A DNA stretch of 64,000 bases, taken from assembly GCF_006345805.1 (NCBI RefSeq), contig NC_043026.1:13123579-13187578 (forward strand). The letters are read 5' to 3'. Source of the stretch: Octopus sinensis (Eukaryota). Under the pieces are notes generated by a model, which saw only the letters and a list, made by a program, of their open reading frames with translations, did no database searches and was not told the origin of the DNA. Position 1 is the first letter of the stretch. Every line of letters begins with the position of its first letter. Shown piece after piece: positions 807 to 26,212 of the stretch. Made by a program: the position numbers and the translations under genes.

Positions 807-1798
807 TATTTCTGAAACCAAATCAAGTTTGGTGGTGGTCAGTTGTAACCATAAACCAATTCTTTTTTCAAAAAAATATCTGAGGTCTAAATTCATAAGT
901 AAGAGGTTTAAACGTTCAGATTCGCAGTGTGCGACATCAATAAACAGTGTTTAGTTCAATTTTAAGAGTGAAAATTAGTTTGAAATTTAGAATGTTCGTA
1001 GAAAGCTGTGATATTCTTAGTAAAATTTACGTTAGGAAATACTTTTAGTTAATTATCTAAAAAGTTACAGTATATTTATTAAACCAATATCAATTTGTAA
1101 TTATCGTGACGTATATTTGCCATTTCAATATGGCTAACCCCTAAGGGTGGATGCTACTGTAGTTTTTAGCCCCAGGAGGACACACTCCTCCAGCTGGCCA
1201 TAGACACACTTTCTGTGCCCTATCAGTATTTGCAAAGGGAAGTCATCCTTCCCGTCTTCAACTTATGATACACACGGACTCGAGTTTCGAGGTATTGACC
1301 TCTCGTCAGCGTGTGACAATTTGTAATTATATTAACAATTATTTAGTTGGAAACATTACATTTATCTATTTATTAATTTCTGCTGTGGGAATAAAATGTG
1401 AAAATAGTGTTTTTTCTTTTTGTTGTAGATGTATGAATTCATAAAATATACTTCTCTTGCAACTGTAAATGCATAAGTTCCAAAAATATATTCTTTTAGT
1501 GTAATATTCACATCGAAAGGATATTCTCACCGTAAGAAGATATTATCACGGTTCAATCTTTAGCTCTTTCAGTTATGTCATCATACGCTGGGGGTTTTGT
1601 TTCCAGCGATCTATTTCCGGATTACGACATCTGATATTCTGTATATTGATATACAAAAAGAAAATTCTGGCATTTTATATTCTGTATATGATATTAATGG
1701 ATGTTTTTAGTGTCACTTCTGGTTTGAATCGCAGAACCATTCCATGTTTCGAAGATCAATTTACCTTCATTCTTATACGACGTTCAACGCGGGCTAAC

Positions 1799-1905
1799 AT
1801 GTGTGTGTGTGTGTGTGTGTGTGTCCGTATGTGTATGTGTGTGTGTGTGCGTGTCGTATGTGGTGTGTGTGCGTGTGTGTGTGTGTGTGTGTGTGCGTGT
1901 GCGTA

Positions 1906-1936
<31 letters not shown>

Positions 1937-2062
1937 CCGTATGTGTGTATGTGTGTGTGTGTGTGTGTCCGTATGTGTATGTGTGTGTGTGTGCGTGTCC
2001 GTATGTGTGTGTGTGTGCGTGTCCGTATGTGTGTGTGTGTGCGTGTGTGTGTGTGTGTGTGT

Positions 2063-2099
<37 letters not shown>

Positions 2100-2100
2100 C

Positions 2101-2147
<47 letters not shown>

Positions 2148-2435
2148 TGTGCGTGTGTGTGCGTATGTGTGCATATGCGTGCATGTGTGTGCGTATGTGT
2201 GTGTGTGTGTGCGTGTGTGTGTGTGTGTGCGCGTGTGCGTGTGTGTGCGTATGTGCGCATATGCGTGCAGTGTGTGTGCGTATGTGTGCGTGTGTGTGTG
2301 TGCGTGTGTGCGTATGTGTATGTGTGTATGTCTGTGTGTGTGCGTGTGCGTATGTGTGTGTGTGGTGGTGTGTGTGTGTGTGTGGTGTGTGTGTGGCGTA
2401 TGTGTGTGTGTGTGTCGTGTGTGTGTGTGTGGTGT

Positions 2436-2470
<35 letters not shown>

Positions 2471-2770
2471 CGTGTGTGTGTGTGTGTGTGCGTGTGCGTG
2501 TGTGTGCGTATGTGTGCTTATGCGTGCATGTGTGTGCGTATGTGTGCGTGTGTGTGTGTGCGTGTGTGCGTATGTGTGTGTCTGTGTGCGTGAGCGTATT
2601 GTGCGTATGTGTGCATGTGTGTGCGTATGTGTGCATGTGTGTGCGTATGTGTGCTTATGCGTGCATGTGTGTGCGTATGTGTGCGTGTGTGTGTGTGCGT
2701 GTGCGTGTGTGTGTCTGTGTGCGTGAGTGTATGTGTGCGTATGTGTGCGTGTGTGTGTGTGTGTGTGTTT
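1799..2770. repeat. Compound (GT)n microsatellite
   Basis: About 970 bp of GT/GCGT/GTAT repeats. Source of the CV/HT pseudo-ORFs. Confidence 0.95.
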
Positions 2771-2878
2771 CTACATTACTGTGCATGTGACTGTGTTTAT
2801 GTATGTGTATTTGTATGTTCTTGGAGTTGTGCGTATTAATGTCGGCTTGCGCGGGCGCTTCTTTGAATTCCCATCCGT

Positions 2879-3748
2879 TTACCCAAGTGGACATATGCAT
2901 AGCGTACATCCTTTTGATGAAGCATTTTCCCTCCTCGGTTCAAACTTTAGCTGTTTGAGCAATGTCGACATAATCTGAGGCATTTGTTTCTCCAGTTCGG
3001 GATTGCGATCAGTGTTGAATTCTTCAGAAGCAACACAGTAAGAGACAGCGGTTAAAAGTGTCAGGAGTTCACGTTCAGTGCCATATTCACTCAAAGCTTT
3101 ACTTAATGTTTCCATAAAACACGTACCATTCGTTTTGTTCCTGAAAGACGAATATTTATTATAGGAGGAATGAAAGACCAACAGATCAGGCATAATTGGA
3201 ATATTGGATAGCGTTTCATTCACTTCTGTTTCAGGGCCATCAGTTACACAGAATCCTTCATCAATCTTTCCTCCACGACATGCTTGAACAAAAATTAATT
3301 TGGGTACTCCACTTAAAGATGGACATTTAACGGGTGTCAGGCAAGAAAGCAAATCATACAGTCCAACATCGCGGTCGTATGCACATAACTGATCGTTTTC
3401 CCTACCATGGCTCATAATTGCACAAACAAAGCAACCAACTGGATTACGAGTTCCAACTTTGTTAACATTTTTGAAAGTATTGAGCATTTCATCGGCTTTT
3501 TTATCTTTAAAAACTGTGACATCCCGTTTAGAAAATCCAAGTTTTATTAATGCCGCTTTAAAAGCTTTTGTATCTTTTGATGAGCCTTCACGATATAGAG
3601 AATCTTTGTTGAAATTTTCGTGGTTGAAGATGTAGGCTACAAGTCGCTTGTTATTTATATCATATTTAGCGAAACATTTACTAAGATCTTCCTTAGTTGG
3701 TGAATGGGGCTGATCGCTTGTCCCAACGTTTTCACCTCCATCTGCCAT
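2879..3748 (-). CDS. Effector-type caspase (caspase-3/7-like, short prodomain), copy A, 289 aa, intronless
   Basis: ATG at 3748 in ACAACCATGG context. Motifs NHENF..REGS, CAIMSHG, KLIFVQACRG, linker VTD/G, DLLVFHSSY..SFRN..GTCF, QMPQIMSTLLKQLKF. No CARD or DED. Ends GCTLCICPLG-stop. Confidence 0.92.
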   Translation of the reverse strand: MADGGENVGTSDQPHSPTKEDLSKCFAKYDINNKRLVAYIFNHENFNKDSLYREGSSKDTKAFKAALIKLGFSKRDVTVFKDKKADEMLNTFKNVNKVGTRNPVGCFVCAIMSHGRENDQLCAYDRDVGLYDLLSCLTPVKCPSLSGVPKLIFVQACRGGKIDEGFCVTDGPETEVNETLSNIPIMPDLLVFHSSYNKYSSFRNKTNGTCFMETLSKALSEYGTERELLTLLTAVSYCVASEEFNTDRNPELEKQMPQIMSTLLKQLKFEPRRENASSKGCTLCICPLG

Positions 3749-3789
3749 GGTTGTCAATGTAAGAAGTGATGAGCAGAACTGGTTCCGTT

Positions 3790-3836
3790 TATTATATATT
3801 TCTGTCCTCTCAGATTGCTATCAATGCGCATGCGTT
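3790..3836 (-). promoter_or_regulatory. Putative caspase A proximal promoter (TATA-like + TGCGCATGCGT NRF1-like motif)
   Basis: TATATAA about 50 bp and GCGCATGCG about 80 bp upstream of the ATG. Same arrangement upstream of all three intact caspase ORFs. Confidence 0.5.
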
Positions 3837-4229
3837 AACGAAATCCAACTCCTCGCTTCCAACTCAAAATATACAAATGCATCAGAAATTCTCACCGTAA
3901 TAATCTGCGTTTCTATTTAAGGACTCCACACCTTAAGGGGTTACACGAAAAACTATCTGAGGGCTGAACTCATAGGCGAGAGGGTTAAACGTTCAGATGC
4001 ACGGTGTTCGATATCGATAGAATGTCTTTCTTCCCTTATTTGGCATTTAAAATTTCGGCAATGTTTCGTTGATGGTTTAAATCTTCGGCAATTTCCGTAA
4101 GGAAATTTTTATTTCTTTATTTTATTTACGTCATTTTGTAGGCGACATTTGCTTAGAAATCGTTGAGGGAGGGGAAAAGTGAACCACACCGAAGAGTGCG
4201 TGCGCAACCATTCACACACACACACGCAG

Positions 4230-4273
<44 letters not shown>

Positions 4274-4532
4274 ATACGTACACACACATACACACACACG
4301 TACACATACAACCACTGACTTTTGTTGTGGATGAGTTGAATATTGAAACCCTCGCTCGCAGAATGCATGAATGTATTTAGGTGTATATGCGAGAAAATGG
4401 CTGTGAATGTGTGTGTATGTGTGTGTGTGTGTGTGTATGTGTGTGTGTGTGTGTGTGAATACAAATACATAAAACAGAACACGCTTGGGCACATGCATAA
4501 TGTTACACGCACACATACACACACACACACAC

Positions 4533-4566
<34 letters not shown>

Positions 4567-4664
4567 ACACACACACACACATAGACACGCCCGCGGGCAA
4601 AATATTTCTGCATTTTTACTCCTCAATGGCCGGAATTTTGAGCTTCAAAATACGGTGCCATCAA

Positions 4665-6030
4665 TTGCGCCGCCGGGACCTCTCCTTTCAGGGTCCTGAG
4701 GGAGATTCCAGAGTTCTACACATCTATCTCCAGCTCATCCCCCTGGCCACCACGGCTTCACCTGCCCTGATGCCTTTTACCATAAAACAAAATCTGCCTT
4801 ACGTAAACTTTCACTCTTCCTACTGCAAACATGTCATGCCCAGCCGAGACGCAATAAGGTGAAGAGGGCCTTCATACTAACCGCGACAGTGTAGCGCAGG
4901 GCCTCTACATTAGGGCTCAGGTCAGGGCTTTGATATGTCGGTGATCAAGAGCAGCGCATTCCGTTGAATAGTTGAGGCAAGTGAGCACTACACCATTTTA
5001 CAATTTCGTTTGCATTTTGTGGTCAGTGCCAAGGAATCTCCGGAGATGCTTCTCAAAGGAGGCAAAAGCCTTTCTGGCAGACTGTATTCACCACTTAACT
5101 TCCAAGTCAGAAATGTTAATACAAGTCAAAGCACTGTCCAGGGATAAAGCCCTCATGTGTACTTCAAAGGCTCCCCGTCTACTGTCAATGGCTCTGGAGC
5201 CCTCGATATAATATGGCAACTTGGTGGAATCTGGTAGAACGCTGAATTGTCTGCCGAGGGCAAAACCCTGACACGCATTTCCCTGATTTTGGTGTAAGTT
5301 CGAAGTCGATCCTGGCTGAAGGTCTTCCCATCTATTCTAGTACGGTTTAAATCGCCCTTTTGCTAGTTGACCATCATGGTGCAAGCACATCTGGACGCAA
5401 ACATACAAGAAAGCTTGGATAACACGCACCACTGCTTCTCACCGTGGTTGACTGCAAACGATTCCCTAAATGTCCGCCAACCAAGGCGAATCCTTCCGTC
5501 CCCGCGATGTCAACAACCTTCTCCAGCACTTACTAAAGTATTTCTCCCATAACTGTGTCTGTGTGAAGATTGTGTCCATCGTTCAACTCCCTCACCTGGT
5601 GCCACATTGATTCTCTGGTAAGACCTGCTCTGAGATGTCTTTTCAGCCGGTTGAGAATGATCTTCGTCAACAGCTCGCCAGTAATGGCCTCATCTCCATG
5701 CAATCATCTCAAATCCCCGCTCAATCTCAATTTTCGCTTTTATCTAATTTTTATTCGTGTCCCATACGGGTCCACAAGATTTCTACATACACCACTCCCT
5801 GGGCTTATAAAGGTACGAGAGTGTTTCACAATGGCGTCAATAAAGACAAGTGTTTGGAAATTGTGGTAACTGGCTCACTCGTCTGTAAATATATTGGACC
5901 CCAGTTCTACACTTTCCATTACGAACGCCTCGGCTGTGTCCAGCATCCAGTCTGGAACCTGTTGCAGCCTTCCTATCTTCTCAGAGCTCTCGTGTAAATC
6001 AACTCCCCGGAAAACACTGATAAACAGCAC
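4665..6030 (-). mobile_element. Degenerate RTE-clade LINE reverse-transcriptase fragment
   Basis: Broken-frame peptides KIILNRL, VLPENQCG, MDTIFT..QLWEK, RIDGKPFSL, HRHIKAL, RLGWA*HV, QILFYG match RTE ORF2 motifs. Many stops and frameshifts. Confidence 0.75.
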
Positions 6031-7309
6031 TAAATGCTTTCTAAGATGGCGTCGTCCACGGTGATGATGCAGACGACAATGACATCATATATATTGTACG
6101 TATTTCTTTAGTGCCACTTAGCTTTGTATTTCAAAACAGTTTCATTTTCCAAGGACAATTTACTTTCCCTGTAAAAATGACGGTCAATTGCATGATAAAC
6201 GCGATCGTACATGTGTATGTGTTGTGTGTGTAAGTGTGTGTGTGTGCGTGTGTGCTTGGTTATGTGTTTGTGTGAAACCTGTTTGGTTTTCTTAAGTGGG
6301 ATCGTGCTGGGATGGGTCTGGCCAGGGATTAAACTGGAGTATTTTGCTGGGATTAATCCAATGACTTAAAAGTAACATGTGGTTATGCCGCAGAAAAAAC
6401 GATTTTCCTTCATTTAGCTGTTATTTCTAGCATGTTGAATTTCTTTGAGGGGTCCATATTTTACATCTTCTGTTCGGGCGAAATCTACGCGGGCGCAAAG
6501 ACACATGTTCAATATGTACAACATTCGGAATTTCTTAGTTTTTGTAAGAAGAAAAATGTAGGAGGAATGACATTGGATCTTTCTTTCTGAAAGTTTAAAA
6601 TTGAAAAAATCTATCTTTCACATTCGAAATCTCCGTTGATTAAGCAAAAAAGTAAAATAAAAAACTGTTACCCCAAATCATAATCCTCGATAACAAAAAA
6701 ATAGGAATGCCTGAGATATTTTTGTAAAATAGAGAGGGTTGAGATAGCGCCGAACAGCGCCGATATTTGAATCAAAAAAGGGTCACACGAAAATATATCT
6801 GAAGGCTGCCCTCATAGGTAAGAGGGTTAAACGGTCAGATGCACGGTGCAAAATATCCGTAAAGAGTCTTTCTTTCAGTATTTGGAATTTAAAAATTCGG
6901 AAATGTTTCGTTGAGGGTCTAAATCTTCGGTAATTTCCGTCACAAAGTTTTATATATTTACTTTCTCGTTTCATGTCGTGTTGAAGGTGACATTTGCTTC
7001 GAAATCAGTGAGGGGGGTGAAAGGTGGAATAGAATGGAGGGCGCGTGCGCAATCGTACACAGATAGACACACGCACATACACACACACACACAAACACCA
7101 CACACAGATCCCTTTGAAATTTAGAATTTAACTATAAGGCACAGGTGTTCTTAATAAAGGCACAGGTGTTCTTATAAAATTCATGCTGAGAAATACTTTT
7201 AGTTAAGTATCACGTTCATGATCATTTTAGCAATTATTTAGCTGAAAATATTACATTTATCTATTTATCAATTTATGCTGTTGGTGTTACCTGTGGAAAT
7301 AGTCATGTT

Positions 7310-7485
7310 ATATATATGTATATATATATATGTATATATATATGTATCGAAATCTGCGATGAGGAATCGGTTTCTGACTGAAGAACGAAGGCTTTGAATG
7401 ACCCGTCTGTCTCTTATGTTCGTCCCTTCGTGTATTTCACGTTATTTATTTATGTAAAGGTTTATTATATATATATCTATATCTA

Positions 7486-7548
<63 letters not shown>

Positions 7549-7566
7549 GTATATATATATTATATA

Positions 7567-7614
<48 letters not shown>

Positions 7615-7640
7615 TATATATATATATACATGTATATACA
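7310..7640. repeat. (TA)n and (TATC)n microsatellites
   Basis: Direct reading. Mirrored at about 26,100-26,460. Confidence 0.9.
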
Positions 7641-7805
7641 TGAGGTTTTTAAAATCTACTCCGTTGCATCTCTGGATGTGTGTGTTTCTAAACCATATTC
7701 TTTTCGTACAATATGCAGATGCGTCAGAAATTCTCACCGTAAGAAGTTCCATATCTATTTAAGGGTCCCACACCAGAAATATTTTACTTCCTCTCTCAAA
7801 ATTTT

Positions 7806-8290
7806 AGGTTTTTGAGCAAGGTTGATATAATCTGAGGCATTCGCTTACAGCCATTATATTTTGAATTGGAATTCAAAAGAGGCAAGATAGTTTTAATCCG
7901 GATCTACCAGCATCGATTTCTTAATCTCACGACCAGCTTGACTAAAGATTAATTTAATTATTCCCTATAATGATGGACAGCAATCGAGTCCCGGGCAAGA
8001 AAGCAACGCATCTAGCTTCACTTCATCGTCGTATCCATATATAACATCGTTTTCTTCCCCATGATACAGAATTGCACAAATAAAGCAATCAATAGTGATA
8101 ACAGGATTATCTTCCTCAAATTCTTTCATCAAAAGACGAGGATTTAAAAAGAGGACCTCAGCTTTATACAGATGTAACAGTCGAACAAATGTTTGACTTC
8201 TGAATCTGTATAAAATCTGAGGTCATCATCTTGAAATCACGATTTTCTCAAGCCCTTTGAACATCTCCGTCTTTTGATGAAAGAATTTGA
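7806..8290 (-). pseudogene. Caspase pseudogene (left-arm copy)
   Basis: Minus strand reads CFICAILYHG...CPSL*GIIKLIFSQAGRE...MPQIISTLLK. In-frame TAG (7965-7967), catalytic Cys replaced by Gly, most of the small subunit deleted. Confidence 0.8.
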
Positions 8291-9849
8291 GCAAGATAAT
8301 CTTGAAATCGTTTTTGATTGCTTTATTTGTGCAATTCCGCGATACACGAAGGACAGACGTAAAAGCTAATACATGGTATTATTTCGTTGTCATTTCAGAG
8401 ATTATCCTCCAGAGATTATCCTCCGGAGTGAAACAAATACCCAAAGAATTGAAGAAACGTTACGCAATGATGCCCAGAAAGTACAATGCAGTGAGAAAAC
8501 AAAGTAAAACAATTTCTGTTTCGCAGACAATGTTTTACTAATCCAGCGATGTATGAGAGCACAGGAATAATATAACCTACATATTGATTTTCGTTAAATA
8601 AATATCCCCTAACATTTTAAGGTGCTGCTTCACTAAAACTATTTCCTCCCGTAAATTTTACTAAAGAACACCAGTGACTTATAGGTCCATTCTAAATTAC
8701 AAAATAATCCTACATTCTGAAAATTGAACCAACATTGTTTTATATACAACTAAATATGAACAATATTAATATCTAGGCTATTTTATTCATGTATTTTCCT
8801 ATATCGCTGGATTCGTAACAGTTTCTCTGCCAAAGAGAAATTTTTTATCTTTCTTCTCTCACTGCATTAAACTATCTCATCACCATTGCGTAATATTTTT
8901 TTCAATTATTCTGCTATTCTTGTTAAATTCTTGTGGATAATCTCCTAATAAAATTTCTCTCTTATAAATGTGAAGTCTCTGAATTGCCAATGAAATATCA
9001 AAATGTATCAGCTTTTTCGTTAGTCTTAATTTATTTAGATATGTAAAGTGTGAATGAAAACTTCTGTAAATTTCTTTGCCTGCAGCGCAATGTTTCCATC
9101 ATGGGTTCAATCTTGTCTTTATCTTGCGTCTAATTGCTCGACAATTTCCGTAAGTAGTTCGTTACGGAAATTGCCGACAACTGAAGGAAAGGCATTTTAT
9201 CTTTTTCGGACACCTCGCATCTGAACGTTTAACCATCTTACTTATGAGTTCAGCCTCCGGATATGTTTTTATGAAATCCTTTCTCTTTCAAATTTCGGCG
9301 GGGTTTACCCTAACCCCAAATCCATATTCCTTTCATTTATTTCTTACTCTTTCCGATGTTTTAGTTATGGAAGATTACGATTTTGCCAAAAAAAGAAAAA
9401 AAAAGAAATTTTCCAAAATAAAAATTTCTTTCCCACCCAAAGTTTTTTTATTTTACAATTTTTTAAAGAGGGGTTTTGTTTAAACTACGTCTACAGACAC
9501 GGAGATAGAATCCGGAAGATTTATTCTTTTAGTTCAAACTTCCAGAAAAAAGACCCTAAGTTGCTTCTCATATATTTCCTTCTTTCCAAAAGTAGAAAAC
9601 TCCTTTTTAGACGGATTGGATGTGTTGCTTTGCGCCTGCGTAGAAGTAAAGTACGAACGTAGAAGAAATGTGGAAGCAAATATGAATCCCTCACTGGAAA
9701 TGTGGATATGGAAGAATAAAAGCTGAAAATATTGTTTCTCGCCCTAAATACACCTTTTTTAAAATTCATTCGATTAATTTCGCAAAGATCTCCAAATCCC
9801 TCCCAGGAAATTCGACTTAAGAAAACTACGAAGATTTCATACAAACACA

Positions 9850-10820
9850 AACACACACGCCACACCACACACTCACTACATACCACAAAGGCATACACAC
9901 TCACGCACGCACACAAACACACACGCCACACGCACACACTCATACATACACACACAGGCATACACACTCACGCACACACCACACACACACACTCATACAT
10001 ACACACACAGGCATACACACTCACGCACACACCACACACACACTTATATATACACACACAAGCATACACACTCACGCACACACCACACGCACACTTATAT
10101 ATACACACACAGGCATACACACTCACGCACACACCACACGCACACTTATATATACACACACAGGCATACACACTCACGCACACACCACACACACACTTAT
10201 ATATACACACACAGGCATACACACTCACGCACACACCACACACACACTTATATATACACACACAGGCATACACACTCACGCACACACCACACGCACACTT
10301 ATATATACACACACAGGCATACACACTCACGCACACACCACACGCACACTTATATATACACACACAGGCATACACACTCACGCACACACCACACACACAC
10401 TTATATATACACACACAGGCATACACCTCACGCACACACCACACACACATTATATATACACACACAGGCACACACACACTCACGCACAACCACACGCACA
10501 CTTATATATAACACACAGCATACACACTCACGCACACCACACGCACACTTTATATATACACACACAGGCATACACACTCACGCACACACCACACACACAC
10601 TTATATATACACAACAGGCATACACACTCACGCACACACCACACACACACTTATATATACACACACAGGCATACACACTCACGCACACACCACACGCACA
10701 CTTATATATACACACACAGGCACACACACTCACGCACACACACAAACACACACCACACGCACACACTCATACATACACACACAGACATACACACACTCAC
10801 ACACACATACACACACACAC
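9850..10820. repeat. 51-bp CA-derived minisatellite
   Basis: Unit CACACACAGGCATACACACTCACGCACACACCACACGCACACTTATATATA, roughly 15 copies. Gives the 17-aa period seen in ORF 9732-10511. Confidence 0.85.
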
Positions 10821-10989
10821 AGACATTCATTCACAACACCCTTATATACGAGAGCAGTTTAACATACACTTGACCGTCATTTTACATTGAAATTGATTTG
10901 TCCTTGGAAACCGAAACTGCGTTGCGATTACAAAGCTGAAGTGGTCCCAAACACATCCTGTAATGTCATAGACCCAATGGATGATGTCA

Positions 10990-11200
10990 GTTCGAAGTGT
11001 TTCCTCAGTGTTATCCGGGGAATCGATTTACAGGAGAACACTCAGACGATAGAGGACATGCAACAAGTTCCGGACAGAATGGTAGAGCAAATTGTGGCTT
11101 TCATAATGGAACGTGTGTGTTCTGGGGCCCATTATATTTACAGAGAAGTGCACCAGTTACTATATAATCTCCAAAGGCATCGCTTTATTCAGGCCACTTG
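10990..11200 (+). mobile_element. Highly diverged fragment homologous to the start of the RTE-like segment at 27,760
   Basis: Visible alignment of CCGGGGAATCGATTTACAGGAGAAC...CAAGTTCCGGAC with CCGGGGAGTTGATTTACACGAGAGC...CAGGTTCCAGAC. Mirror copy at about 22,450-22,660. Confidence 0.55.
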
Positions 11201-11384
11201 AAGTACTTTGATGGGTTAATACAATGAATTAAAATGAAATAATTTAAGAGAGAATTTATTTCGATATAGAATTTCAGTTTTTGCTTTCGTAGGAAATCTG
11301 TTTTTGTTTTATTCGCAATACTCGCGCGTACACTCACACTTAGCCGGAAGACAGACAGACAGACAGACATACACACGAACATAC

Positions 11385-11655
11385 ATGTATGTGTGTAGTA
11401 TGTGTGTGTGTATGTATGTATGTATGTATGTATGTATGTATGTATGTATGTATGTATGTATGTAGGATGTATGTATGTATGTATGTATGTATGTATGTAT
11501 GTATGTATGTATGTATGTCTGTATGTATGTATGTATGTATGTATGTATGTATGTATGTATGTATGTATGTATGTATGTTTGTATGCATGTATATGTATGT
11601 ATGTATGTATGTTTGTATGATATGTATGTATGTATGTAGTATGTCTGTATGTATG
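11385..11655. repeat. (TATG)n microsatellite
   Basis: Direct reading. Shorter mirror at about 22,100-22,270. Confidence 0.95.
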
Positions 11656-11825
11656 GAAGAAAAAACTATTTCCACAGGTAACACCAACAGCATAAATTGA
11701 TAAATAGATAAATGTAATATTTTCAGCTAAATAATTGCTAATATGATTACAAATTGATATTGGTTTAATAAATACTCTAATTTTGCAAGATGCCTAACTA
11801 AACCCATTCCTAGCATGAATTTTAT

Positions 11826-12925
11826 TAAGAACACCTGTGCTTTTTTTTAAAAACACCCCCTGCCTTTATTAGAACACCTGTGTCTTTATTAAGAACACCT
11901 GTGTCTTTATTAAGAACAGATGTGCCTTTATTAAGAACAAACGTGCCTTTATTAAGAACACCTGTGTCCTTCCTTATTAAGAACACCTGTGTCTTTTTAA
12001 GAACACCTGTGTCTTTATTAAGAACAGATGTGCCTTTTTAGAACAAACGTGCCTTTATTAAGAACACTGGTCCTTATTAAGAACACCTGTGTCTTTATTA
12101 AGAACACCTGTGTCCTTATTAAGAACACCTGTGTCTTTATTAAGAACATCTGCATCTTTTAAGAACACCTGTGCCTTTATTAAGAACACACCTGTGTCTT
12201 TATAAAGAACAAATGTACCTTTATTAAGAAACACCTCTGCCATTATTAAGAACACCTGTGTCTTTATTAAGAACACCTGTGTCTTTATTAAGAACAGATG
12301 TGCCTTTATTAGAACAAATGTGCCTATTAAGAACACCCGTGTCCTTATTAAGAACACCTGTGCCTTTATTAAGAACATCTGTGTCTTTATTAAGAACAAA
12401 TGTGCCTTTATTAAGAACACCTGTGTCCTTATTAAGAACACCTGTGTCTTTATTAAGAACACCTGTGTCCTTATTAAGAACACCTGTGTCTTTATTAAGA
12501 ACATCTGCATCTTTATTAAGAACACCTGTGCCTTTATTAAGAACACCTGTGTCTTTATAAAGAACAAATGTACCTTTATTAAGAACACCTCTGCATTTAT
12601 TAAGAACACCTCTGCATTTATTAAGAACACCTGTGTCTTTATTAAGAACACCTGGTGTCTTTATTAAGAACAGATGTGCCTTTATTAGAACAAATGTGCC
12701 TTTATTAAGAACACCCGTGTCCTTATTAAGAACACCTGTGCCTTATTAAGAACACTCTGTGTCTTTATTAAGAACAAATGTGCCTTTATTAAGAACACCT
12801 GTGTCCTTATTAAGAACACCTGTGTCTTTATTAAGAACACCTGTGTCCTTATTAAGAACACCTGTGTCTTTATTAAGAACATCTGCATCTTTATTAAGAA
12901 CACCTCTGCATTTATTAAGAACACC
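11826..12925. repeat. 21-bp minisatellite (TTTATTAAGAACACCTGTGTC)n, about 52 copies
   Basis: Continuous tandem monomers with no spacers. 7-aa period in overlapping pseudo-ORFs. Confidence 0.95.
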
Positions 12926-12980
12926 AGTTATATTCTAAATTTCAAAATAATTCTACACTCTGAAACTTGAACTAACAATT

Positions 12981-13110
12981 AAACAAGTCCAGAAGTTAGG
13001 TTAAATATAGATACAAGCAGAAGTACCATGAATTCCCTTTCTATAAACTGGCAAACAGTTCTGTGAATGCTTCACGGCCAACGCCGGGTATTAAGTCTAG
13101 TATGCAACTA
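12981..13110 (+). mobile_element. Helitron-like 3' end fragment
   Basis: GC hairpin (CCGGC-CAAC-GCCGG in the mirror copy) followed by CTAG|T. Absent from paralogous modules at about 8,730 and 16,070. Confidence 0.55.
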
Positions 13111-13299
13111 AATGCGTACAATATTAATATGGATACTTTCGTAAAACGCTGGATTCGTAAAACATTGTCTGCGAAAGAGAAATTGATTTATTTTTCTTTT
13201 CTCACAGCATTGTATTATTTCAGCAGCATTCCGTAAAGTTCTTTTTTTTCAGTTCTCCTGCTATTTTTTTACTCTCCTGTAAAATCTTCAATGATATTT

Positions 13300-13548
13300 T
13301 AGTTAGTTAGTTAATTTTTTGGCTCAAAAAGAAAAAGCAAGGCATGTAGGGGGACATGGAGTTATGTACAGGGTGGTGCTCATGCAAAGAGTTCAGGCCA
13401 TTTCTGGTCAAGGGAGCCTTTGAACCGAGCGGTCGTCGGCATCTTCACTATCTCGTCCGGCAGCTTATTCCACGGATCCGCAACCCCGGACGGAGAAAAA
13501 GCCCTCTCCTTCGATTCAGATTCAGCATGAAATCATCGCAGATAGAGC
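13300..13548 (-). mobile_element. CR1-clade LINE 3' fragment
   Basis: Minus strand SVRVADPWNKLPDEIVKMPTTARFK..LDQKWPELF plus 3' UTR ending in (TAAC)n. Same family as 49,652-50,150. Confidence 0.8.
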
Positions 13549-13968
13549 TGTTTGTCTGTTATTAACACAAAGTCCCTGAAATGACGACGAAATATAAATG
13601 TATCAGCTTTTATGTTAGTTTTTAAGGTCTTAAAATATTTCAAGCTTGAAGAATGGCTTCTCATGTATTTCCGTTCGACTGCAACGCCATCTTTCGATGA
13701 CGTTTTCAATCTTGTGATTTCCGTATCGTTTTCTTGCAGCTGATTGTTCGGCAATTTCCGTAAGTAATTTCTTTCATTTTCATCATTCATGTCCTGTTCA
13801 ATTCGAGTTTGCTTTGATGTCGGTGAGGGAGGCAAAATGAGATATTGAGGCTAGCAATCACTACACGTATATACTCATACACACACACGATCAAACACAC
13901 GTACACACGTACACACACACACGTGCACTTGTATCACACACTCGTTACGTGTATATGAAATACAATTG

Positions 13969-14126
13969 GTGAGTGGCTGTGTGGTAAGTAGCTTGCTTAC
14001 CAACCACTGGTTCCGGGTTCAGTCCCACTGCGTGGCATCATGGGCAAGTGACTTCTGCTATAACCCCGGGCCGACCAATGCCTTGTGAGTGGATTGGTAG
14101 ACGGAAACTGAAAGAAGCCTGTCGTA

Positions 14127-14172
<46 letters not shown>

Positions 14173-14399
14173 TATATATATGTGTGTGTGTGTGTGTGGT
14201 GTGTGTGTGTGTTTGTGTTGTCCCCTAGCATTGCTTGACAACCGATGCTGGTGTGTTTACGTCCCCGTAACTTAGCGGTTCGGCGAAAGAGACCGATAGA
14301 ATAAGTACTGGACTACAAAGAATAAGTCCCGGGGTCGATTGCTGACTAAAGGCGGTGCTCCAGCATGGCCGCAGTCAAATGACTAAACAAGTAAAGAGT
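13969..14399 (+). mobile_element. tRNA-derived SINE, family A (TGGGCAAGT core, internal (TA)n, GGCGGTGCTCCAGCATGGCC 3' region)
   Basis: A/B-box-like head (TGGCTGTGTGG...GGTTCAGTCCC). At least 8 related copies in the window. Confidence 0.85.
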
Positions 14400-14620
14400 A
14401 TGTGTGTGTGCGTGTGTGCGGTGTGTGTTTGTGTGGTGTGTGTGTGTGTGTGTGCGCGTGTGTGTGTCGTGTGTGCGGTGTGTGTATGTGTGCGTGTGTG
14501 TTTGTGTGTGTGTGTGGTTGTGCTTTGTGTGTGCGTGCGCGTGTGTGTGTGTTTGTGTGTTTGTGTGTGTGTGGTGTGTGCGTGTGTGTGTTTGTTTGTG
14601 TGTTTGTGTGTGTGCGTGTG

Positions 14621-14652
<32 letters not shown>

Positions 14653-14653
14653 C

Positions 14654-14685
<32 letters not shown>

Positions 14686-14864
14686 GTGACCGGAATGTAA
14701 CGGCCGAAAACAAATAATCTCATTACACAAAGAACTAAAGTTTGAACCGAGGAGCTATGATATTTCAGATGTAATAACCTCAAATGAACATGGATCTTCT
14801 GACGGTGACAATTTCTGATTCATGCGCACATCTTGAGTTGAAAGCCAGGGGTCGGATTTCGTTA

Positions 14865-14915
14865 ACGCATGCGCATTGATAGCAATCTGAGAGGACTGAA
14901 AGAATATATAATACA
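14865..14915 (+). promoter_or_regulatory. Putative promoter of pseudo-caspase C (ACGCATGCGCA + TATATAA)
   Basis: Near-identical to motifs upstream of caspases A and B at similar spacing. Confidence 0.5.
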
Positions 14916-14956
14916 CGGAACTAAGTTCAGCTCATCACATTCTTACATTGACTACC

Positions 14957-15676
14957 ATGGACACTGAAAGCGCAAACATTGGGACAAGCGATCAGCCCAA
15001 TTCACCAACTAAGAAAGATCTTAGTAAATGTTTCGCTAAATATGATATGGAAAATAAAACACGTGTAGCTTATATAGTCGACCCTAAGTGTTCAACAAAC
15101 GATGCAGCAGATTTTAGAAGGGCATTAGAACGTATTGGATTTAAATGTGAACCTATTTATAACGATTTTGAAACAATGTGCAAAGATTTGGAAAAGTTTA
15201 AGGAAACTGAACGTAAAAATAAAATTGGTTGCTTTATTTGTGCAGTTATAAACCAAGATCACGAGAAAGCTGGATCTGACGTAATTGCACTAACTTCTAA
15301 GCTGACAGCCGATAAGTGTCAATCTTTAAAAGGAGTTCCTAAATTAATTTTTATTGAAGCAGTTGAAATAGTTGGAAGATTCCACGCAGTGGATGCACCT
15401 GAAACAGGCAATATACTTAAAATCCCAATAACGGCAGATCTGTTGGTTTTTCGTTCGTGGCGGAAAGAATGTCTGCCAATCCACGGCAAACATGAAGCTT
15501 CGCCATTTATGAAAATATTAACCGAAAATTTGAATGAGTATGGCACTAAATATGAAATCCTGAAACTATTAACCATTACTTCTGGTGAATTCCAAAGTTC
15601 GGAGAATTCGAAAAATAATGGCTCTGAAAGAAAGACTCAGATTGCGTCGACATTGCTCAAAGAACTAATGTTTTGA
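14957..15676 (+). CDS. Catalytically dead caspase homologue (pseudo-caspase C), 239 aa, intact ORF
   Basis: N-terminus GTSDQPNSPTKKDLSKCFAKYD matches A/B. GCFICAVINQD replaces SHG and KLIFIEAVE replaces QACRG. DLLVFRS and QIASTLLKELMF retained. No stops or frameshifts; ACTACCATGG start. Confidence 0.82.
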   Translation: MDTESANIGTSDQPNSPTKKDLSKCFAKYDMENKTRVAYIVDPKCSTNDAADFRRALERIGFKCEPIYNDFETMCKDLEKFKETERKNKIGCFICAVINQDHEKAGSDVIALTSKLTADKCQSLKGVPKLIFIEAVEIVGRFHAVDAPETGNILKIPITADLLVFRSWRKECLPIHGKHEASPFMKILTENLNEYGTKYEILKLLTITSGEFQSSENSKNNGSERKTQIASTLLKELMF

Positions 15677-16449
15677 ACCAGCGAACTAAAATATTTCCGG
15701 TGTGGGATCCTTAAATAGAAATGCGCTTCTTATGGTGAGAATTTCTGATGCATCTACATATTATATGAAAAGAATATATTTTAGATATTCATACATCGAA
15801 AACTACAAGAATTTTAAGAATTCATATATCTACAAATAAATGCACAATTTCACGTGCAATACCCACAGCAGAAATTGATAAATCGATAAATACAATATTT
15901 TCAACTAAATGATTGCTAATATGATTACAAACTTGATTTTAGTTTAATATCTTCGAACATTTTAAGATGCTTCACTAAACCTATTTCCTACCATAAATTT
16001 TACTAAGAACACCACGTGACTTATTGGTACATTCTAAATATCAAAATAATTCTACACTCTGAAATTGGACTAACATTCTTTTATATACAACTAATATGAA
16101 CAATATTAATACGTAGACTATTTTATTCACATGCTTTCATATATCGCTGATTCCTAAAGGTTATCCGCCAAACAGAAATTATTTTCTTTCTTTTCTTATT
16201 GCATTATATCTCAGTACAATTGCGTAACGTTTCTTTCTTCCAATAATTCTGATATTTTTTTTTACTCTGGTGGTTAATCTCTCCTTAAAATTTGTCTTTT
16301 ATTAACATATTGTCTCTGAATTGCCAACAACATAATAAAATCTATCAGCTTGTACGTTGTTTGTAATTAATTTAAAACATATTAAGTGTAAATGAATGTT
16401 TCGTCTGTAATTTTGTTTGCCTGGAACGCAATATTTCCATGATGTTTTC

Positions 16450-16730
16450 AATCCTGTCATTTTCCTGTCAATTTCCTGTCATTTTCCTGTCAATTTCCTG
16501 TCATTTTCCTGTCAATTTCCTGTCATTTTCTCGTCAATTTCCTGTCATTTTCCTGTCATTTTCTTGTCATTTTCCTGTCAATTTCCTGTCAATTTCCTGT
16601 CAAATTCCTGTCATTTTCTTGTCATTTTCTTGTCATTTTCCAGTCATTTTCTTGTCAAATTCCTGTCAAATTCCTGTCAATTTTCCTGTCAATTTCTTGT
16701 CATTTTCCTGTCATTTTCCTGTCATTTTCT
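16450..16730. repeat. 11-bp minisatellite (TTTTCCTGTCA / ATTTCCTGTCA), about 25 copies
   Basis: Direct reading. Confidence 0.9.
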
Positions 16731-17699
16731 TGCAGCTGATTGTTCGGCAATTTCCGTAAATAATTTTTAAATAATTTACCATCATTTCATGTCCTGTTGA
16801 AGTCGACATTTCCTTTTGAAGTCGGTGAGGTGGACAAAATGAGACACTGAGGCTAGGAGCGAGTGTAGAAGGAACTCGCATACTCACACGCACGCGCCAA
16901 CACACACACACACACTTACCCACACACACCAACCACACACACACACACGCGCACACACACACACACTTACCCACACACACATATACAATGCATGTATGAA
17001 CGCGTATAAGAAATGTAATTTGTTTAGCTGTGCGTGTGTGTGTGTGTGCGTGTGTGTGTGTGTCGTGTGTGTGTGTGTGTGTGTGTGAGTTGATGTGTGT
17101 GGAAGTAAAGCATTTTCGTGTTTCTCTGTGCGTGCAACATTGTGCTTGCGTGTGAGCGCGTTCTGTTTAACTATTATACACACAAACACACAACATACAT
17201 ACACACACTCACACACACACCAGACACACGACACACACACACACACACAAACTCGCAAACACACACAGACTCAAACACACACGCACACACAGAGACTCAC
17301 CCACACACACACACACGACACACAGACTCACAGACTCACACACACGACACACCACACACACACATACACACACTCACACACACACAGACACATGACACAC
17401 ACACACACACAAACTCGCAAAAACACACAGACTCAAACACACACACACGACACACACACACACACAGACTCACACACACACACGACACACACACACAGAC
17501 TCACACACGACACACACACATACACACACACACACACATACACACACATACACACACACACATACACACACACACATACACACACGCACACACACACATG
17601 CACACATATTACCTCTCATATTCATCTAAATACATTCATACATCTTGCAAGTCTGGGTTTACATTAAGGGGTCAATGGTTGTATGTCGTGTGCTTGTAC

Positions 17700-18940
17700 T
17701 GGTACTGATTTATTTGACCCCAAAAAGACGCGAGGCAAAGACAACCACGAGGGAACTTGAACCCAGAACGCAAAGAGGAAATGATGCCACGTAACCCCCC
17801 CCCCCACATATATAATCTTTCCTACCACAAGCTCACAAGCAGAAGTTTTGTTGGGTGAACAGTCGATTACAACGACCGCGGTGCTCCACTCCACTGGTGG
17901 AATTTGAACCCAGAACGGAAAGACTGATGCAATTCAACTAAGCCACAAATGCACACGCATAATAACCCTTCTACAATAGGCACAAGGCCTGCAATTTTGG
18001 GGTTAGGGGGATGGTCGATTCCACAGAACCCCAGTGCTCCACTGGTATATATTTCTTTTACTACCCACAAGGGGCTAAACACAGAGGGGACAAACAAGGA
18101 CAGACAAAGGATTAAGTCGATTATATCGACCCCAGTGTGTAACTGGTACTTAATTTATCGACCCGAAAGGATGAAAGGCAAAGTCGACCTCGGTGGAATT
18201 TGAACTCAGAACGTTCAAATTCCACCGATTATATTGACCCCAGTGCGTAACAATCAGTAATAAGACGGTGGCGGTGTCTTAATTAGTTTTGCTTCGTTCA
18301 GCTACACACTGTCAGGACAAGCACGAACCGACCATCCAACATCCCAGTCTCCTATACCGCCTATCCACAACTCTCCCTTTTCCTGCCGACCAGCTCACTT
18401 GCTAACCGCAGTGAACACCCCTGCCTACAGTTCGTCTACAATCCTTGCTCAGTGCCTTACACTAATACTTATTTCATCGATCCCGAAAAGGATAAAAGGG
18501 CAAGTTGACTTCGTGGAGTTTGAACCCTGGATACAAAGAAGGATGAAATTATGTGAAGCAACACACACACACGTGCGCCTAATAATCCTCCCACTAAAGG
18601 CAAAACGCTTGAATTTTGCGGGTTGGGCAGTCGATTACGTTGACCCCTAGTGTATGACTGGTACTCATTTCATTGACCAAGGTAGGATGAAAGGCTAAGT
18701 GAGTCTCGGTTGAATTTGAACCTAGTTTCCGTTTCCTATAAGTCGCCAAAAAAAAAAACAGCTTTTACTGCAAACAGATGAAATGCAAGCGAGCAACACA
18801 CATACGAAATAACCTTTTCCACTAAAAGCACAAGGGCTGAAATTTTGACGGGCAGGACTAATTGATTACATCGACCCTAGTACGCAACTGGTACCCACTT
18901 CATTGATTCTTAAGGGATAAAAGGCAATGGTTGATCCGAA
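17700..18940 (-). mobile_element. Cluster of degenerate SINE family B fragments
   Basis: Several diverged copies of GATCGACCCCAGT..CTGGTAC..GGATGAAAGGCAAAGTCGAC..GAATTTGAAC. Best copy at about 18,050-18,212. Confidence 0.7.
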
Positions 18941-18951
18941 TTTTGACGGGC

Positions 18952-19184
18952 GTTTGACTGCGGCCATGCTGGAGCACCCGCCTCTAGTCGAGCAAATCGA
19001 CACCACGACTATTTTTGTAAGCCTAGTACTTATTCTATCGGTCTCTTTCGCCGAACCGCTAAGTTACGGGGACGTAACACACCAGCATCGTTTGTCAAGC
19101 AATGCTAGGGGGACAAACACAGACACAAACACAGACACGCATATATTATATATATTATATATTATAATATATATATATATATAT

Positions 19185-19222
<38 letters not shown>

Positions 19223-19453
19223 ATATATTATATATGTATATATGTAGGTCCCGGGTTGAGTCGGGGTTAACCACAGTAAATAAGGTACTCAATACATAGC
19301 AGAGTAAATTAATTTATTATATAGAAGCTTTGGTGATGGTTATAAGGGCACTGGGGTGTGCTAGGATATGTAGGTCCCGGGTTGAGTCGGGGTTAACCAC
19401 AGTAAATAAGGTACTCAATACATAGCAGAGTAAATTACTTTATTATATAATAA

Positions 19454-19486
<33 letters not shown>

Positions 19487-19509
19487 TATATATATATATA
19501 TATAATATA

Positions 19510-19565
<56 letters not shown>

Positions 19566-26132: not shown

Positions 26133-26212
<80 letters not shown>

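What the first reader, a model, noticed from the sequence alone, without database searches (positions are those of the whole stretch)
2879..3748. Caspase A vs B: almost purely non-synonymous divergence, concentrated in substrate-binding loops
Seen (manual codon alignment): only 3 synonymous differences (Ser TCA/TCC, Val GTC/GTT, Asn AAC/AAT). Against these stand 16 amino-acid-changing codons in the body, 7 more plus a stop in the tail, a remodelled segment NKDSLY vs KNNHPES, and two in-frame codon indels. The 191 nt covering SHG to QACRG (30,570-30,760 in B) are identical, and neighbouring non-coding arm sequence (1,500-1,800) looks about 99% identical. Known: the segment before the REGS arginine, the SFRN region and the loop before QMPQ form caspase loops L1, L3 and L4. 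Inference: diversifying selection on substrate specificity or inhibitor evasion, resisting arm homogenisation.
Basis: partly seen in the sequence, partly recalled or inferred. Interest (0 to 1): 0.78.

Follow-up and report, generated by a model that had tools for sequence, protein, structure and literature searches.

The report
Fast-evolving duplicated octopus executioner caspases
Two inverted copies of an executioner-caspase gene in the Octopus sinensis genome differ almost only by amino-acid-changing substitutions; related copies suggest adaptive protein evolution mixed with gene conversion, but the A-versus-B comparison alone is not statistically significant.

Summary
The window is Octopus sinensis nuclear DNA, not a virus. 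Caspase A (2879-3748, -) and caspase B (30278-31255, +) are intact caspase-3/6/7-like genes. They lie in the two arms of a ~12.7 kb inverted duplication inside one contig.

The A-B test is not significant (ML omega 1.46, p=0.48; with tail 1.89, p=0.21). Enrichment in the substrate loops is weak (p=0.10).

Three more copies add support: O. vulgaris orthologue V, and C and D on an unplaced O. sinensis contig. Across the five copies there are 51 replacement and 5 synonymous variable sites (p=0.002; 0.023 with clusters collapsed). Replacement-site divergence is 8-fold (A-V) and 24-fold (B-D) the divergence of 4.4 kb of adjacent non-coding DNA. Lys/Glu swaps are about six times over-represented.

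Site patterns conflict, so the copies exchange tracts, including A with B. This argues against "resisting homogenisation".

Best reading (about 0.5): recurrent positive selection on surface charge and loops L1/L4, in a gene family reshuffled by gene conversion. Neutral drift with clustered mutations remains a serious rival.

The parts
2879..3748 (-). Caspase A: 289-codon ORF from ATG 3748 to stop at 2879-2881. Executioner-type caspase with SHG and QACRG intact.
   Evidence: Its sequence is an NCBI protein as such. The closest relative is O. vulgaris caspase-3-like P0003.
30278..31255 (+). Caspase B: 325-codon ORF. Same protease domain as A, plus a disordered basic tail (…SSKKRPRKPT…) that runs into the CA-rich microsatellite.
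   Evidence: AF2 model has mean pLDDT 76. Foldseek best matches are caspase-7/-6/-3, with target-normalised TM 0.85-0.90.
1440..14181 (.). Arm A of the inverted duplication (~12.7 kb).
   Evidence: Self-BLAST and chained alignment. Outer boundary. Inner boundary.
19477..32345 (.). Arm B of the inverted duplication, the reverse complement of arm A.
   Evidence: There is no N run between the arms; the only gap is 35328-35427.
14182..19476 (.). Spacer between the arms (~5.3 kb). It contains a catalytically dead caspase paralogue.
3593..3610 (-). L1-loop remodelled segment in A (NKDSLY), just before the P1-binding Arg. The B counterpart KNNHPES is at 30416-30436.
   Evidence: The state is shared by A and V versus B, C and D, so it is an old A-type/B-type difference. 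The loop assignment comes from AF2 secondary structure (loop 43-57).
3269..3459 (-). 191-nt stretch identical between A and B (B: 30570-30760). It covers the strand before SHG through to QACRG.
   Evidence: A run of at least 191 nt given 27 differences has p=0.026. O. vulgaris V differs here at 4 replacement sites. A recent A/B/C conversion tract therefore fits as well as constraint does.
2987..3025 (-). L4-loop region in A (SEEFNTDRNPELE-KQ). In B it is 31004-31045 (SSEFKTYRNPELEKKQ): 3 replacement codons plus 1 codon indel.
2879..2911 (-). A-specific cluster of 8 substitutions in 30 nt that creates the early stop (GCTLCICPLG*). B, C, D and V all keep ARxRSRSPLEE….
   Evidence: No donor sequence was found in the window or the fetched loci. 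The cluster overlaps the splice donor used in the O. vulgaris model.
14957..15676 (+). Spacer pseudo-caspase (ORF from TTG 14948). It has the caspase fold signature but lacks both the catalytic His and Cys.
7902..8138 (-). Relic caspase p20 fragment inside arm A. Its mirror copy is at 25600-25836 (+).
   Evidence: tblastn.
1800..2790 (.). (CA/TG)n-rich microsatellite block 3' of caspase A, mirrored at about 31260-31990. A second block lies 5' at about 4160-4600, mirrored at about 29260-29870.

Best explanation
The window is Octopus sinensis chromosomal DNA. A and B are two intact executioner-type (caspase-3/6/7-like, short-prodomain) caspase genes. They are transcribed outwards from the two arms of a ~12.7 kb palindrome with a 5.3 kb spacer. 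They belong to a young, octopus-specific, multi-copy caspase cluster.

Shown:
- The copies exchange short tracts by gene conversion or recombination.
- Across five close copies, the coding sequence accumulates replacement changes faster than its own synonymous sites and faster than the adjacent non-coding DNA.
- The active-site core stays identical.

Inferred:
- Recurrent positive (diversifying) selection drives this.
- It acts mainly on surface charge (Lys/Glu swaps on helices alpha1, alpha2 and alpha4) and on specificity loops L1 and L4.
- This would be expected if the enzymes are tuning substrate or partner recognition, or escaping an inhibitor.

Gene conversion then reshuffles the selected variants among copies. 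This is why A versus B looks like a mosaic. The A-B contrast on its own is statistically weak. A's truncated tail is a separate, lineage-specific clustered mutation of uncertain coding status.
For: Identity:
- Best protein hits are O. sinensis, O. vulgaris and O. bimaculoides caspases.
- Pfam C14. PDB sequence and fold matches to caspase-7/-6/-3 and Sf-caspase-1.
- The palindrome lies in one contig.

Rate excess:
- NG86 omega is 1.6-3.8 in 5 of 6 pairs among A, B, C and V.
- ML omega: A-V 2.9 (p=0.049), B-V 3.2 (p=0.027), V-C 3.9 (p=0.028).
- Four-taxon M0 omega is 1.8-2.3.
- Five copies: 51 replacement versus 5 synonymous variable sites. P(S<=5)=0.002 with the empirical spectrum, 0.023 with clusters collapsed.
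- pN versus 4403 unmasked upstream columns: A-V 4.3% vs 0.55% (Fisher 1e-12); B-D 2.7% vs 0.11% (2e-12); A-B 3.5% vs 1.57% (0.0014). pS is consistent with the upstream rate in 7 of the 10 pairs, including A-B.
- In CDS nt 225-276, A-specific and V-specific replacements interleave. Both orthologues therefore changed independently within about 2.5 My.

Non-random type of change:
- Lys/Glu swaps are 6 of 23 (A-B) and 10 of 48 (four copies), against 4% expected (p=2e-4 and 2e-5).
- The same RAA transition is not a hot spot in non-coding DNA: 1.0% versus 4.4% (p=0.013).

Conversion from diverged functional paralogues would import many synonymous differences. These are not seen.
Against: - The A-B pair alone gives omega=1.46, p=0.48.
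- The best-fitting four-taxon tree gives LRT p=0.10-0.12.
- Only 4-5 synonymous changes exist, so omega has a wide interval.
- Several replacements come in tight clusters: codons 31-34, 48-54, 148-149, 244, and the tail. These look like multinucleotide or conversion events and inflate replacement counts.
- Reticulation violates the single-tree models: all three four-taxon splits are present.
- Arm divergence is patchy (0-3.5% per 400 nt). The A-B CDS is therefore not an outlier.
- pS is elevated over the upstream rate in B-C, B-D and C-D. This shows that tract exchange contributes to CDS-limited differences.
- 13 of 19 B-D differences match A/V-type states.
- The Lys/Glu pattern was noticed post hoc.
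- Both assemblies derive from noisy long reads. Expression and the true 3' end are unknown.
Confidence: 0.5

Rival explanations
1. There is no adaptive evolution. A and B are redundant young duplicates drifting under relaxed constraint (omega about 1). The replacement excess is a small-sample effect. It is amplified by multinucleotide mutations and by short gene-conversion tracts that move blocks of pre-existing differences between copies.
For: - A-B omega is not different from 1.
- M0 LRT p=0.10-0.12 on the best tree.
- Substitution clusters are obvious.
- Site patterns are incompatible, and 13 of 19 B-D differences match A/V-type states.
- The A copy carries an early stop and new Cys residues.
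Against: - Neutral drift cannot push replacement-site divergence to 8-24x the flanking non-coding rate in A-V and B-D.
- It cannot make Lys/Glu swaps six times commoner than the mutation spectrum predicts.
- All five ORFs and all catalytic and P1-binding residues stay intact.
- The five-copy N:S is 51:5 (p=0.002-0.023).
Confidence: 0.3
2. One reading: selection keeps the A and B coding sequences apart against arm-to-arm homogenisation that erases differences in the neighbouring DNA.
For: The CDS (3.2-4%) is flanked by near-identical non-coding DNA. 3752-4160 has 3 differences in 400 nt. 1470-1800 has about 2 in 330 nt.
Against: - Those two flanks are also near-identical in O. vulgaris V and in copy C. 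Their similarity is therefore not A-B homogenisation.
- A-B synonymous divergence (2.2%) equals the arm average (1.6%).
- A and B share the derived DINN tract and a 191-nt identical core inside the CDS.
- Further upstream, non-coding DNA is as diverged as the CDS (2.3-3.5%).
- Copies C and D in the sister palindrome are homogenised through the CDS.
Confidence: 0.1
3. Assembly artefact. The A/B contig is a chimera of haplotypes or paralogous palindromes, or paralogous reads were mis-polished, so some 'differences between arms' are not differences within one molecule.
For: - Four close copies exist in one assembly: A, B, and C/D on the unplaced 33.8 kb contig.
- B and D are 0.11% apart upstream.
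- The contig ends 3 kb beyond arm B, at gap 35328-35427.
- The assembly is PacBio plus Hi-C (Li et al. 2020, as cited in bioRxiv 10.1101/2023.05.16.540928).
Against: - Both arms and the spacer are contiguous without Ns.
- Mis-polishing can swap variants but cannot invent them.
- A is independently corroborated by the O. vulgaris assembly in its flanks (0.55% divergence).
- The replacement bias holds in every pairing of copies except C-D, including the cross-species ones.
Confidence: 0.08

Closest known systems
Executioner caspases of clan CD family C14A (human caspase-7/-3/-6, Spodoptera frugiperda caspase-1)
   Same: - Pfam Peptidase_C14 across the full domain.
- SHG His and QACRG Cys are present, with Arg before alpha1 and Arg in SFRN for P1-Asp binding.
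- Short N-terminal peptide, with no CARD or DED.
- The predicted fold superposes on caspase-7/-6/-3.
   Different: - Only about 30% identical to solved structures.
- The domain is encoded on a single exon.
- B-type copies have an extra disordered basic C-terminal tail.
- Activity and cleavage specificity are untested.
Lineage-specific caspase expansions in molluscs (e.g. bivalve/gastropod caspase-3/6/7 groups, PMC11543851)
   Same: Tandem or inverted clusters of short-prodomain caspases that are specific to a mollusc lineage. The closest hits are all Octopus paralogues at 45-63% identity.
   Different: These copies are cephalopod-specific. They are only 90% identical to each other and sit in a palindrome. 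The rate excess over flanking DNA has not, to my knowledge, been described for them.
Genomic palindromes with arm-to-arm gene conversion (e.g. human Y-chromosome ampliconic palindromes; from general knowledge)
   Same: Inverted arms of more than 10 kb around a unique spacer, genes in the arms, patchy near-identity, and shared derived tracts between arms.
   Different: The arms are much less homogenised (0-9% per 300 nt, against more than 99.9% in the Y palindromes). The genes in the arms differ by 10% at the protein level.
Catalytically dead caspase homologues (pseudo-caspases such as cFLIP; from general knowledge), relevant to the spacer ORF
   Same: Caspase-like domain without the catalytic Cys and His, conserved as an ORF between O. 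sinensis and O. bimaculoides.
   Different: No DED domains. Function, expression and even translation are unknown.

Membership tests
Caspase (MEROPS C14A / Pfam PF00656) | Significant full-length match to the Peptidase_C14 profile | tested here: met
   A: E=5.9e-44, profile positions 3-232 of 233. B: E=1.5e-44.
Caspase (MEROPS C14A / Pfam PF00656) | Catalytic His (SHG) and Cys (QACRG) dyad | tested here: met
   Both motifs are present and identical in A, B, C, D and V.
Caspase (MEROPS C14A / Pfam PF00656) | P1-Asp pocket residues: Arg after L1, Gln of QACRG, Arg of L3 (S-x-R) | tested here: met
   REGS Arg, QACRG and SFRN align with the equivalent residues of Sf-caspase-1. The residue roles come from established caspase structural knowledge.
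Caspase (MEROPS C14A / Pfam PF00656) | Caspase alpha/beta fold | tested here: met
   AF2 core pLDDT is above 90. Foldseek top hits are caspase-7/-6/-3, E about 1e-24, TMt 0.85-0.90.
Executioner (effector) subclass | Short prodomain without CARD or DED | tested here: met
   Only about 34 residues precede beta1. No other Pfam domain is found. The nearest PDB sequences are caspase-7/-3/-6 and Sf-caspase-1.
Executioner (effector) subclass | Asp cleavage site in the inter-subunit linker, and Asp-specific proteolytic activity | not testable with these tools
   The linker contains candidate Asp residues (CVTD/GPETEVNE; low-pLDDT residues 167-180). Cleavage and activity need biochemistry.
Gene under positive (diversifying) selection | dN/dS significantly above 1 for the A-B pair | tested here: not met
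   ML omega 1.46, LRT p=0.48. With the tail: 1.89, p=0.21. Binomial p=0.11-0.16.
Gene under positive (diversifying) selection | dN/dS significantly above 1 across related copies, robust to clusters and recombination | tested here: inconclusive
   Pairwise p=0.03-0.05 for pairs involving V. M0 p=0.03-0.12. Five-copy N:S 51:5, p=0.002, or 0.023 with clusters collapsed. No recombination- or MNM-aware model was available.
Gene under positive (diversifying) selection | Replacement rate above an independent neutral reference (adjacent non-coding DNA) | tested here: met
   pN/upstream is 2.2 (A-B, p=0.0014), 7.9 (A-V, p=1e-12) and 24 (B-D, p=2e-12). Caveat: arm divergence is patchy.
Palindrome with arm-to-arm gene conversion | Long inverted arms around a unique spacer within one contiguous sequence | tested here: met
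   Arms are about 1440-14181 and 19477-32345. The spacer is 5.3 kb, with no N run inside.
Palindrome with arm-to-arm gene conversion | Phylogenetic signature of exchange between arms | tested here: met
   AB|VC(D) sites: 6 in the CDS, including the DINN tract, while the flank tree is (A,V),(B,C,D). AV|BC, AB|VC and AC|VB patterns all occur within 850 nt.

The most novel reading that the evidence does not exclude
The locus is a hypervariable executioner-caspase system. Paralogous and perhaps allelic copies are kept diverse by diversifying selection. Gene conversion acts as the shuffling engine, as in immune-type gene families. The striking excess of AAA/GAA (Lys/Glu) differences would then reflect the cephalopod A-to-I RNA-editing landscape. 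Edited adenosines are known to be replaced by genomic G more often than unedited ones in coleoids (PMC7703385). Under this reading the paralogues would be 'hard-wired' alternative editing states.
Probability: 0.1. Interest if true: 0.75.

Novelty: new member of a known kind. Interest (0 to 1): 0.4.

Why it matters
Executioner caspases are normally among the more conserved components of the cell-death machinery. A cephalopod-specific cluster would therefore stand out if three things hold. First, near-identical copies (0.1-0.5% apart in flanking DNA) differ by 2-4% in the coding sequence, almost all of it replacement. Second, charge reversals are repeated. Third, specificity loops L1 and L4 are remodelled. 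Such a cluster would be a candidate for an arms race with a pathogen-encoded or endogenous caspase inhibitor, or for rapid sub-functionalisation of cell-death or immune proteolysis in octopus. It also gives a compact natural experiment (A, B, C, D, V) for mapping which surface and loop residues tune caspase specificity. If the signal instead proves to be conversion plus clustered mutation, it is a useful cautionary example for pairwise dN/dS on young duplicates.

Tried and rejected
1. Viral or terminal-repeat origin. Rejected: the sequence is full of (CA)n microsatellites, dispersed repeats and C2H2 zinc-finger genes, and the best hits are Octopus nuclear genes.

2. Hi-C scaffolding artefact. 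Rejected: the only N run is 35328-35427, outside the arms.

3. Donor search for A's tail cluster. No match with up to 3 mismatches in the window, and no exact match in the fetched loci.

4. Finding a B-type copy or the palindrome in O. vulgaris. This did not work.
   - No B-like or spacer-pseudo-caspase protein is annotated there.
   - P0009 lies 3.3 Mb away.
   - The 10 kb flank of V ends at the inner arm boundary, in a dispersed repeat.
   - No eukaryotic genome DNA search tool was available.

5. C as an allele of A. Rejected: C's outer flank is 3.8% from A while A-V is 0.6%. Whether the C/D contig is a haplotig of the whole palindrome or a paralogous palindrome stays open.

6. A general GAA/AAA mutational hot spot. 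Not supported by non-coding DNA.

7. Conversion from the diverged neighbours P0005 and the spacer pseudo-caspase as the source of most differences. This fits only the 5' DINN tract and a few sites. Most singletons have no counterpart there.

8. RNA-editing 'hard-wiring' in the A-to-G direction. Polarisation shows that three of A's changes are G-to-A (Glu to Lys), so the simple version does not fit.
Full report
**What the sequence is**

The window has 34-50% GC. It is packed with (CA/TG)n microsatellites and dispersed repeats. Its right half carries C2H2 zinc-finger genes.

The two ORFs of the finding are Pfam Peptidase_C14 caspases. Their best database relatives are Octopus sinensis, O. vulgaris and O. 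bimaculoides 'caspase-3/7-like' proteins. Both ORFs exist as NCBI proteins on a 15.1 Mb O. sinensis scaffold. So this is octopus nuclear DNA, not a virus. None of the operator cautions about viruses or toxins come into play.

**Anatomy**

- Caspase A (2879-3748, minus strand) and caspase B (30278-31255, plus strand) point outwards from the two arms of an inverted duplication.
- Arm A is about 1440-14181 and arm B about 19477-32345. The spacer is 5.3 kb.
- The only assembly gap is 35328-35427, so the arms and spacer lie in one contig.
- Each arm also carries a relic caspase fragment (7902-8138 and 25600-25836), a 21-bp tandem array, and microsatellite blocks on both sides of the caspase gene.
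- The spacer holds a third caspase-like ORF (14957-15676) that lacks both the catalytic His and Cys.

**Family assignment**

- A and B keep SHG, QACRG, the Arg after loop L1 and the Arg of SFRN.
- They have only about 34 residues before the first strand, and no CARD or DED.
- The closest solved sequences are Sf-caspase-1, caspase-7, -3 and -6.
- An AlphaFold model of B (mean pLDDT 76, core above 90) matches caspase-7/-6/-3 with target-normalised TM 0.85-0.90.
- They are executioner-type caspases. Residues 278-325 of B, the tail, are predicted to be disordered.

**Checking the observation**

| Item | Count |
|---|---|
| Replacement codons outside the remodelled segment | 16 |
| Remodelled L1 segment NKDSLY / KNNHPES | 5 replacement codons + 1 codon indel |
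| Second codon indel | 1, in L4 |
| Replacement codons in the tail | 7, plus a stop in A |
| Synonymous differences | 4 |

The 191-nt identical run is exact. A run this long is unlikely if differences were spread uniformly (p=0.026). The tract 1470-1800 really is about 99% identical to arm B.

That tract is not representative, however. Masked arm divergence ranges from 0 to 9% per 300 nt. It is 1.7% over 4600-11540 and 2.3-3.5% over 4161-6915.

**Is A versus B more than chance?**

- NG86 gives Sd=4, Nd=30, dS=0.021, dN=0.046, omega=2.1. The one-sided binomial p is 0.107.
- Using the mutation spectrum measured on 175 non-coding arm differences, the expected synonymous share is 0.253. For the body alone (23:4) this gives p=0.16.
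- A GY94 F3x4 maximum-likelihood fit gives omega=1.46 (LRT p=0.48) for the body and 1.89 (p=0.21) with the tail.

Loop concentration is also weak. Using AF2 secondary structure, L1-L4 make up 29% of the protein and hold 10 of 23 replacement codons (p=0.10). Counted as mutational events this is 6 of 19 (p=0.49). The rest sit on surface helices alpha1, alpha2 and alpha4.

**Bringing in relatives**

I fetched three further close copies.
- V is the O. vulgaris orthologue (P0003, locus L002).
- C (P0001) and D (P0035) lie in inverted orientation about 25 kb apart on an unplaced 33.8 kb O. sinensis contig. This contig is a second copy of the whole palindrome.

In 4403 unmasked upstream columns the tree is clearly (A,V),(B,C,D). 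There are 48 AV-versus-rest sites. Pairwise upstream differences are A-V 24 (0.55%), B-D 5 (0.11%), B-C 14, C-D 15 and A-B 69 (1.57%). A and V are also almost identical in the 1.4 kb outside the arm, where C is 3.8% away.

O. sinensis and O. vulgaris split about 2.5 Mya (bioRxiv 10.1101/2023.05.16.540928). The A-type and B-type lineages are therefore older than that split. Whether O. vulgaris still has a B-type copy could not be determined.

**The coding sequence behaves differently from its surroundings**

| Pair | Replacement : synonymous | pN | Upstream non-coding rate | Ratio | Fisher p |
|---|---|---|---|---|---|
| A-V | 28:3 | 4.3% | 0.55% | 7.9x | 1e-12 |
| B-D | 18:2 | 2.7% | 0.11% | 24x | 2e-12 |
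| A-B | 23:4 | 3.5% | 1.57% | 2.2x | 0.0014 |

(All.) Synonymous divergence is compatible with the upstream rate in 7 of the 10 pairs, including A-B.

- Over the five copies there are 51 replacement and 5 synonymous variable sites. P(S<=5)=0.002, or 0.023 when each tight cluster counts once.
- ML omega is 2.9-3.9 (p=0.03-0.05) for pairs that include V. A four-taxon M0 fit gives 1.8-2.3 (p=0.03-0.12, depending on topology and cluster removal).
- In CDS nt 225-276, A-specific and V-specific replacements interleave. Both orthologues therefore changed independently in a short time.

**The changes are not a random sample of replacements**

- Lys/Glu swaps make up 6 of 23 replacements between A and B, and 10 of 48 among four copies. 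About 4% is expected from codon content and the mutation spectrum (p=2e-4 and 2e-5).
- The underlying RAA transition is not elevated in non-coding DNA: 1.0% per site against 4.4% in the CDS (p=0.013).
- A has gained Lys (three Glu-to-Lys and one Thr-to-Lys), and B/C/D have lost Lys. By my tally of the A-B replacements listed, the A body is about 5 charge units more basic than the B body.
- This pattern was noticed post hoc and needs independent confirmation.

**Gene conversion is clearly at work**

- All three four-taxon splits occur within 850 nt of CDS.
- A and B share a derived tract (ATAAATAAC---, DINN). Their nearest relatives V, C and D lack it. The tract is identical in the neighbouring O. 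vulgaris paralogue P0005.
- C and D carry A/V-type states in the 3' third of the CDS. As a result, 13 of the 19 B-D differences match A or V.
- C and D are almost homogenised with each other: 6 nt differences, 3N:3S.
- Conversion reshuffles variants and explains the mosaic. It cannot by itself create a 10:1 replacement bias. Tracts imported from diverged functional paralogues would carry many synonymous differences, and these are not seen.

**The tail**

- The eight substitutions within 30 nt that give A its early stop are specific to A. B, C, D and V share ARxRSRSPLEETDGSSKKRPRK.
- No donor sequence was found.
- The O. vulgaris gene model splices exactly at the start of this cluster (GCAC|GTAAGC) to a small 3' exon. 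That exon is also present downstream of C. For A it would lie just left of the window.
- The tail is outside the fold and possibly non-coding. It should not be counted as evidence about substrate binding.

**Conclusion**

Most likely (about 0.5), this is a young octopus-specific executioner-caspase family under recurrent positive selection. The selection would act on surface charge and on loops L1 and L4, with an invariant catalytic core. Variants are shuffled among copies by gene conversion within and between palindromes.

The main rival (about 0.3) is relaxed drift plus clustered mutation and conversion, with a chance deficit of synonymous changes. An assembly chimera cannot be excluded without reads (about 0.08).

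The caspases themselves are new members of a known family. The evolutionary pattern is a known kind of phenomenon in an unstudied lineage.

Noticed in passing
window 14957-15676 (+), ORF from TTG 14948: The palindrome spacer holds an intact 239-242-codon caspase-like ORF with no catalytic His or Cys (SHG becomes NQD, QACRG becomes EAVEIVG). O. bimaculoides has two annotated relatives (P0031, P0032; 57% and 56% identity) that also lack both residues. This suggests a pseudo-caspase conserved for about 34 My.
   Followed up: partly
L001 (10001-10897) and L004 (10001-10897), both on O. sinensis contig VCDQ01006033.1: An unplaced 33.8 kb contig carries a second copy of the whole palindrome. Its two caspases (XP_029654380.2 and XP_029654382.2) differ by only 2 residues. 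It may be a haplotig or a paralogous locus; this is unresolved. Its upstream DNA is 0.11% from arm B, but its CDS is 2.3% from B.
   Followed up: partly
window 3602-3898 vs 14802-15103 vs 30123-30369; L002 14121-14250: The first ~130 nt of the CDS (MADGGENVGTSDQPHSPTKEDLSK…) and ~150 nt upstream are 84-100% identical among paralogues that are otherwise only 40-60% identical. These are A/B, the spacer pseudo-caspase and O. vulgaris P0005. This points to a shared promoter and N-peptide module, or to 5'-end gene conversion.
   Followed up: partly
window 31120-31200 (B tail); equivalents in L001, L004 and L002: B, C, D and V keep an in-frame basic tail with an NLS-like KKRPRK motif. A loses it through the A-specific substitution cluster and stop at 2879-2911. 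The O. vulgaris model instead splices this region out.
   Followed up: partly
window 7902-8138 (-) and 25600-25836 (+): Mirror-image relic fragments of a caspase p20 region (65-78 aa). They are closest (65-69%) to O. vulgaris caspase P0009, not to A or B.
   Followed up: no
window 11821-12925 and 20745-21940: A 21-bp tandem array (about 53 copies, unit TTTATTAAGAACACCTGTGTC) lies in each arm near the spacer. Copy number differs between the arms.
   Followed up: partly
window 46445-47756: A 131-bp tandem repeat: 10 copies, 96% matches, strongly C/T-skewed.
   Followed up: no
window 43023-44159 (+), 57621-58361 (-), 62289-63086 (+): Three long single-exon C2H2 zinc-finger ORFs (multi-finger arrays with TGEKPY linkers). 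These are typical of the octopus ZNF expansion.
   Followed up: no
window 13971-14400, 18953-19514, 32370-32757, 37240-37617, 40370-40677, 50275-51094: A dispersed repeat of about 400 bp sits at both inner arm boundaries and near the outer boundary of arm B. It is a candidate substrate for the rearrangement that made the palindrome.
   Followed up: no
window 35328-35427: A 100-N assembly gap lies 3 kb beyond arm B. The 1.1 kb before it (34197-35327) resembles the region downstream of copies C and V. The duplicated segment may therefore have extended further on the B side before being interrupted.
   Followed up: partly
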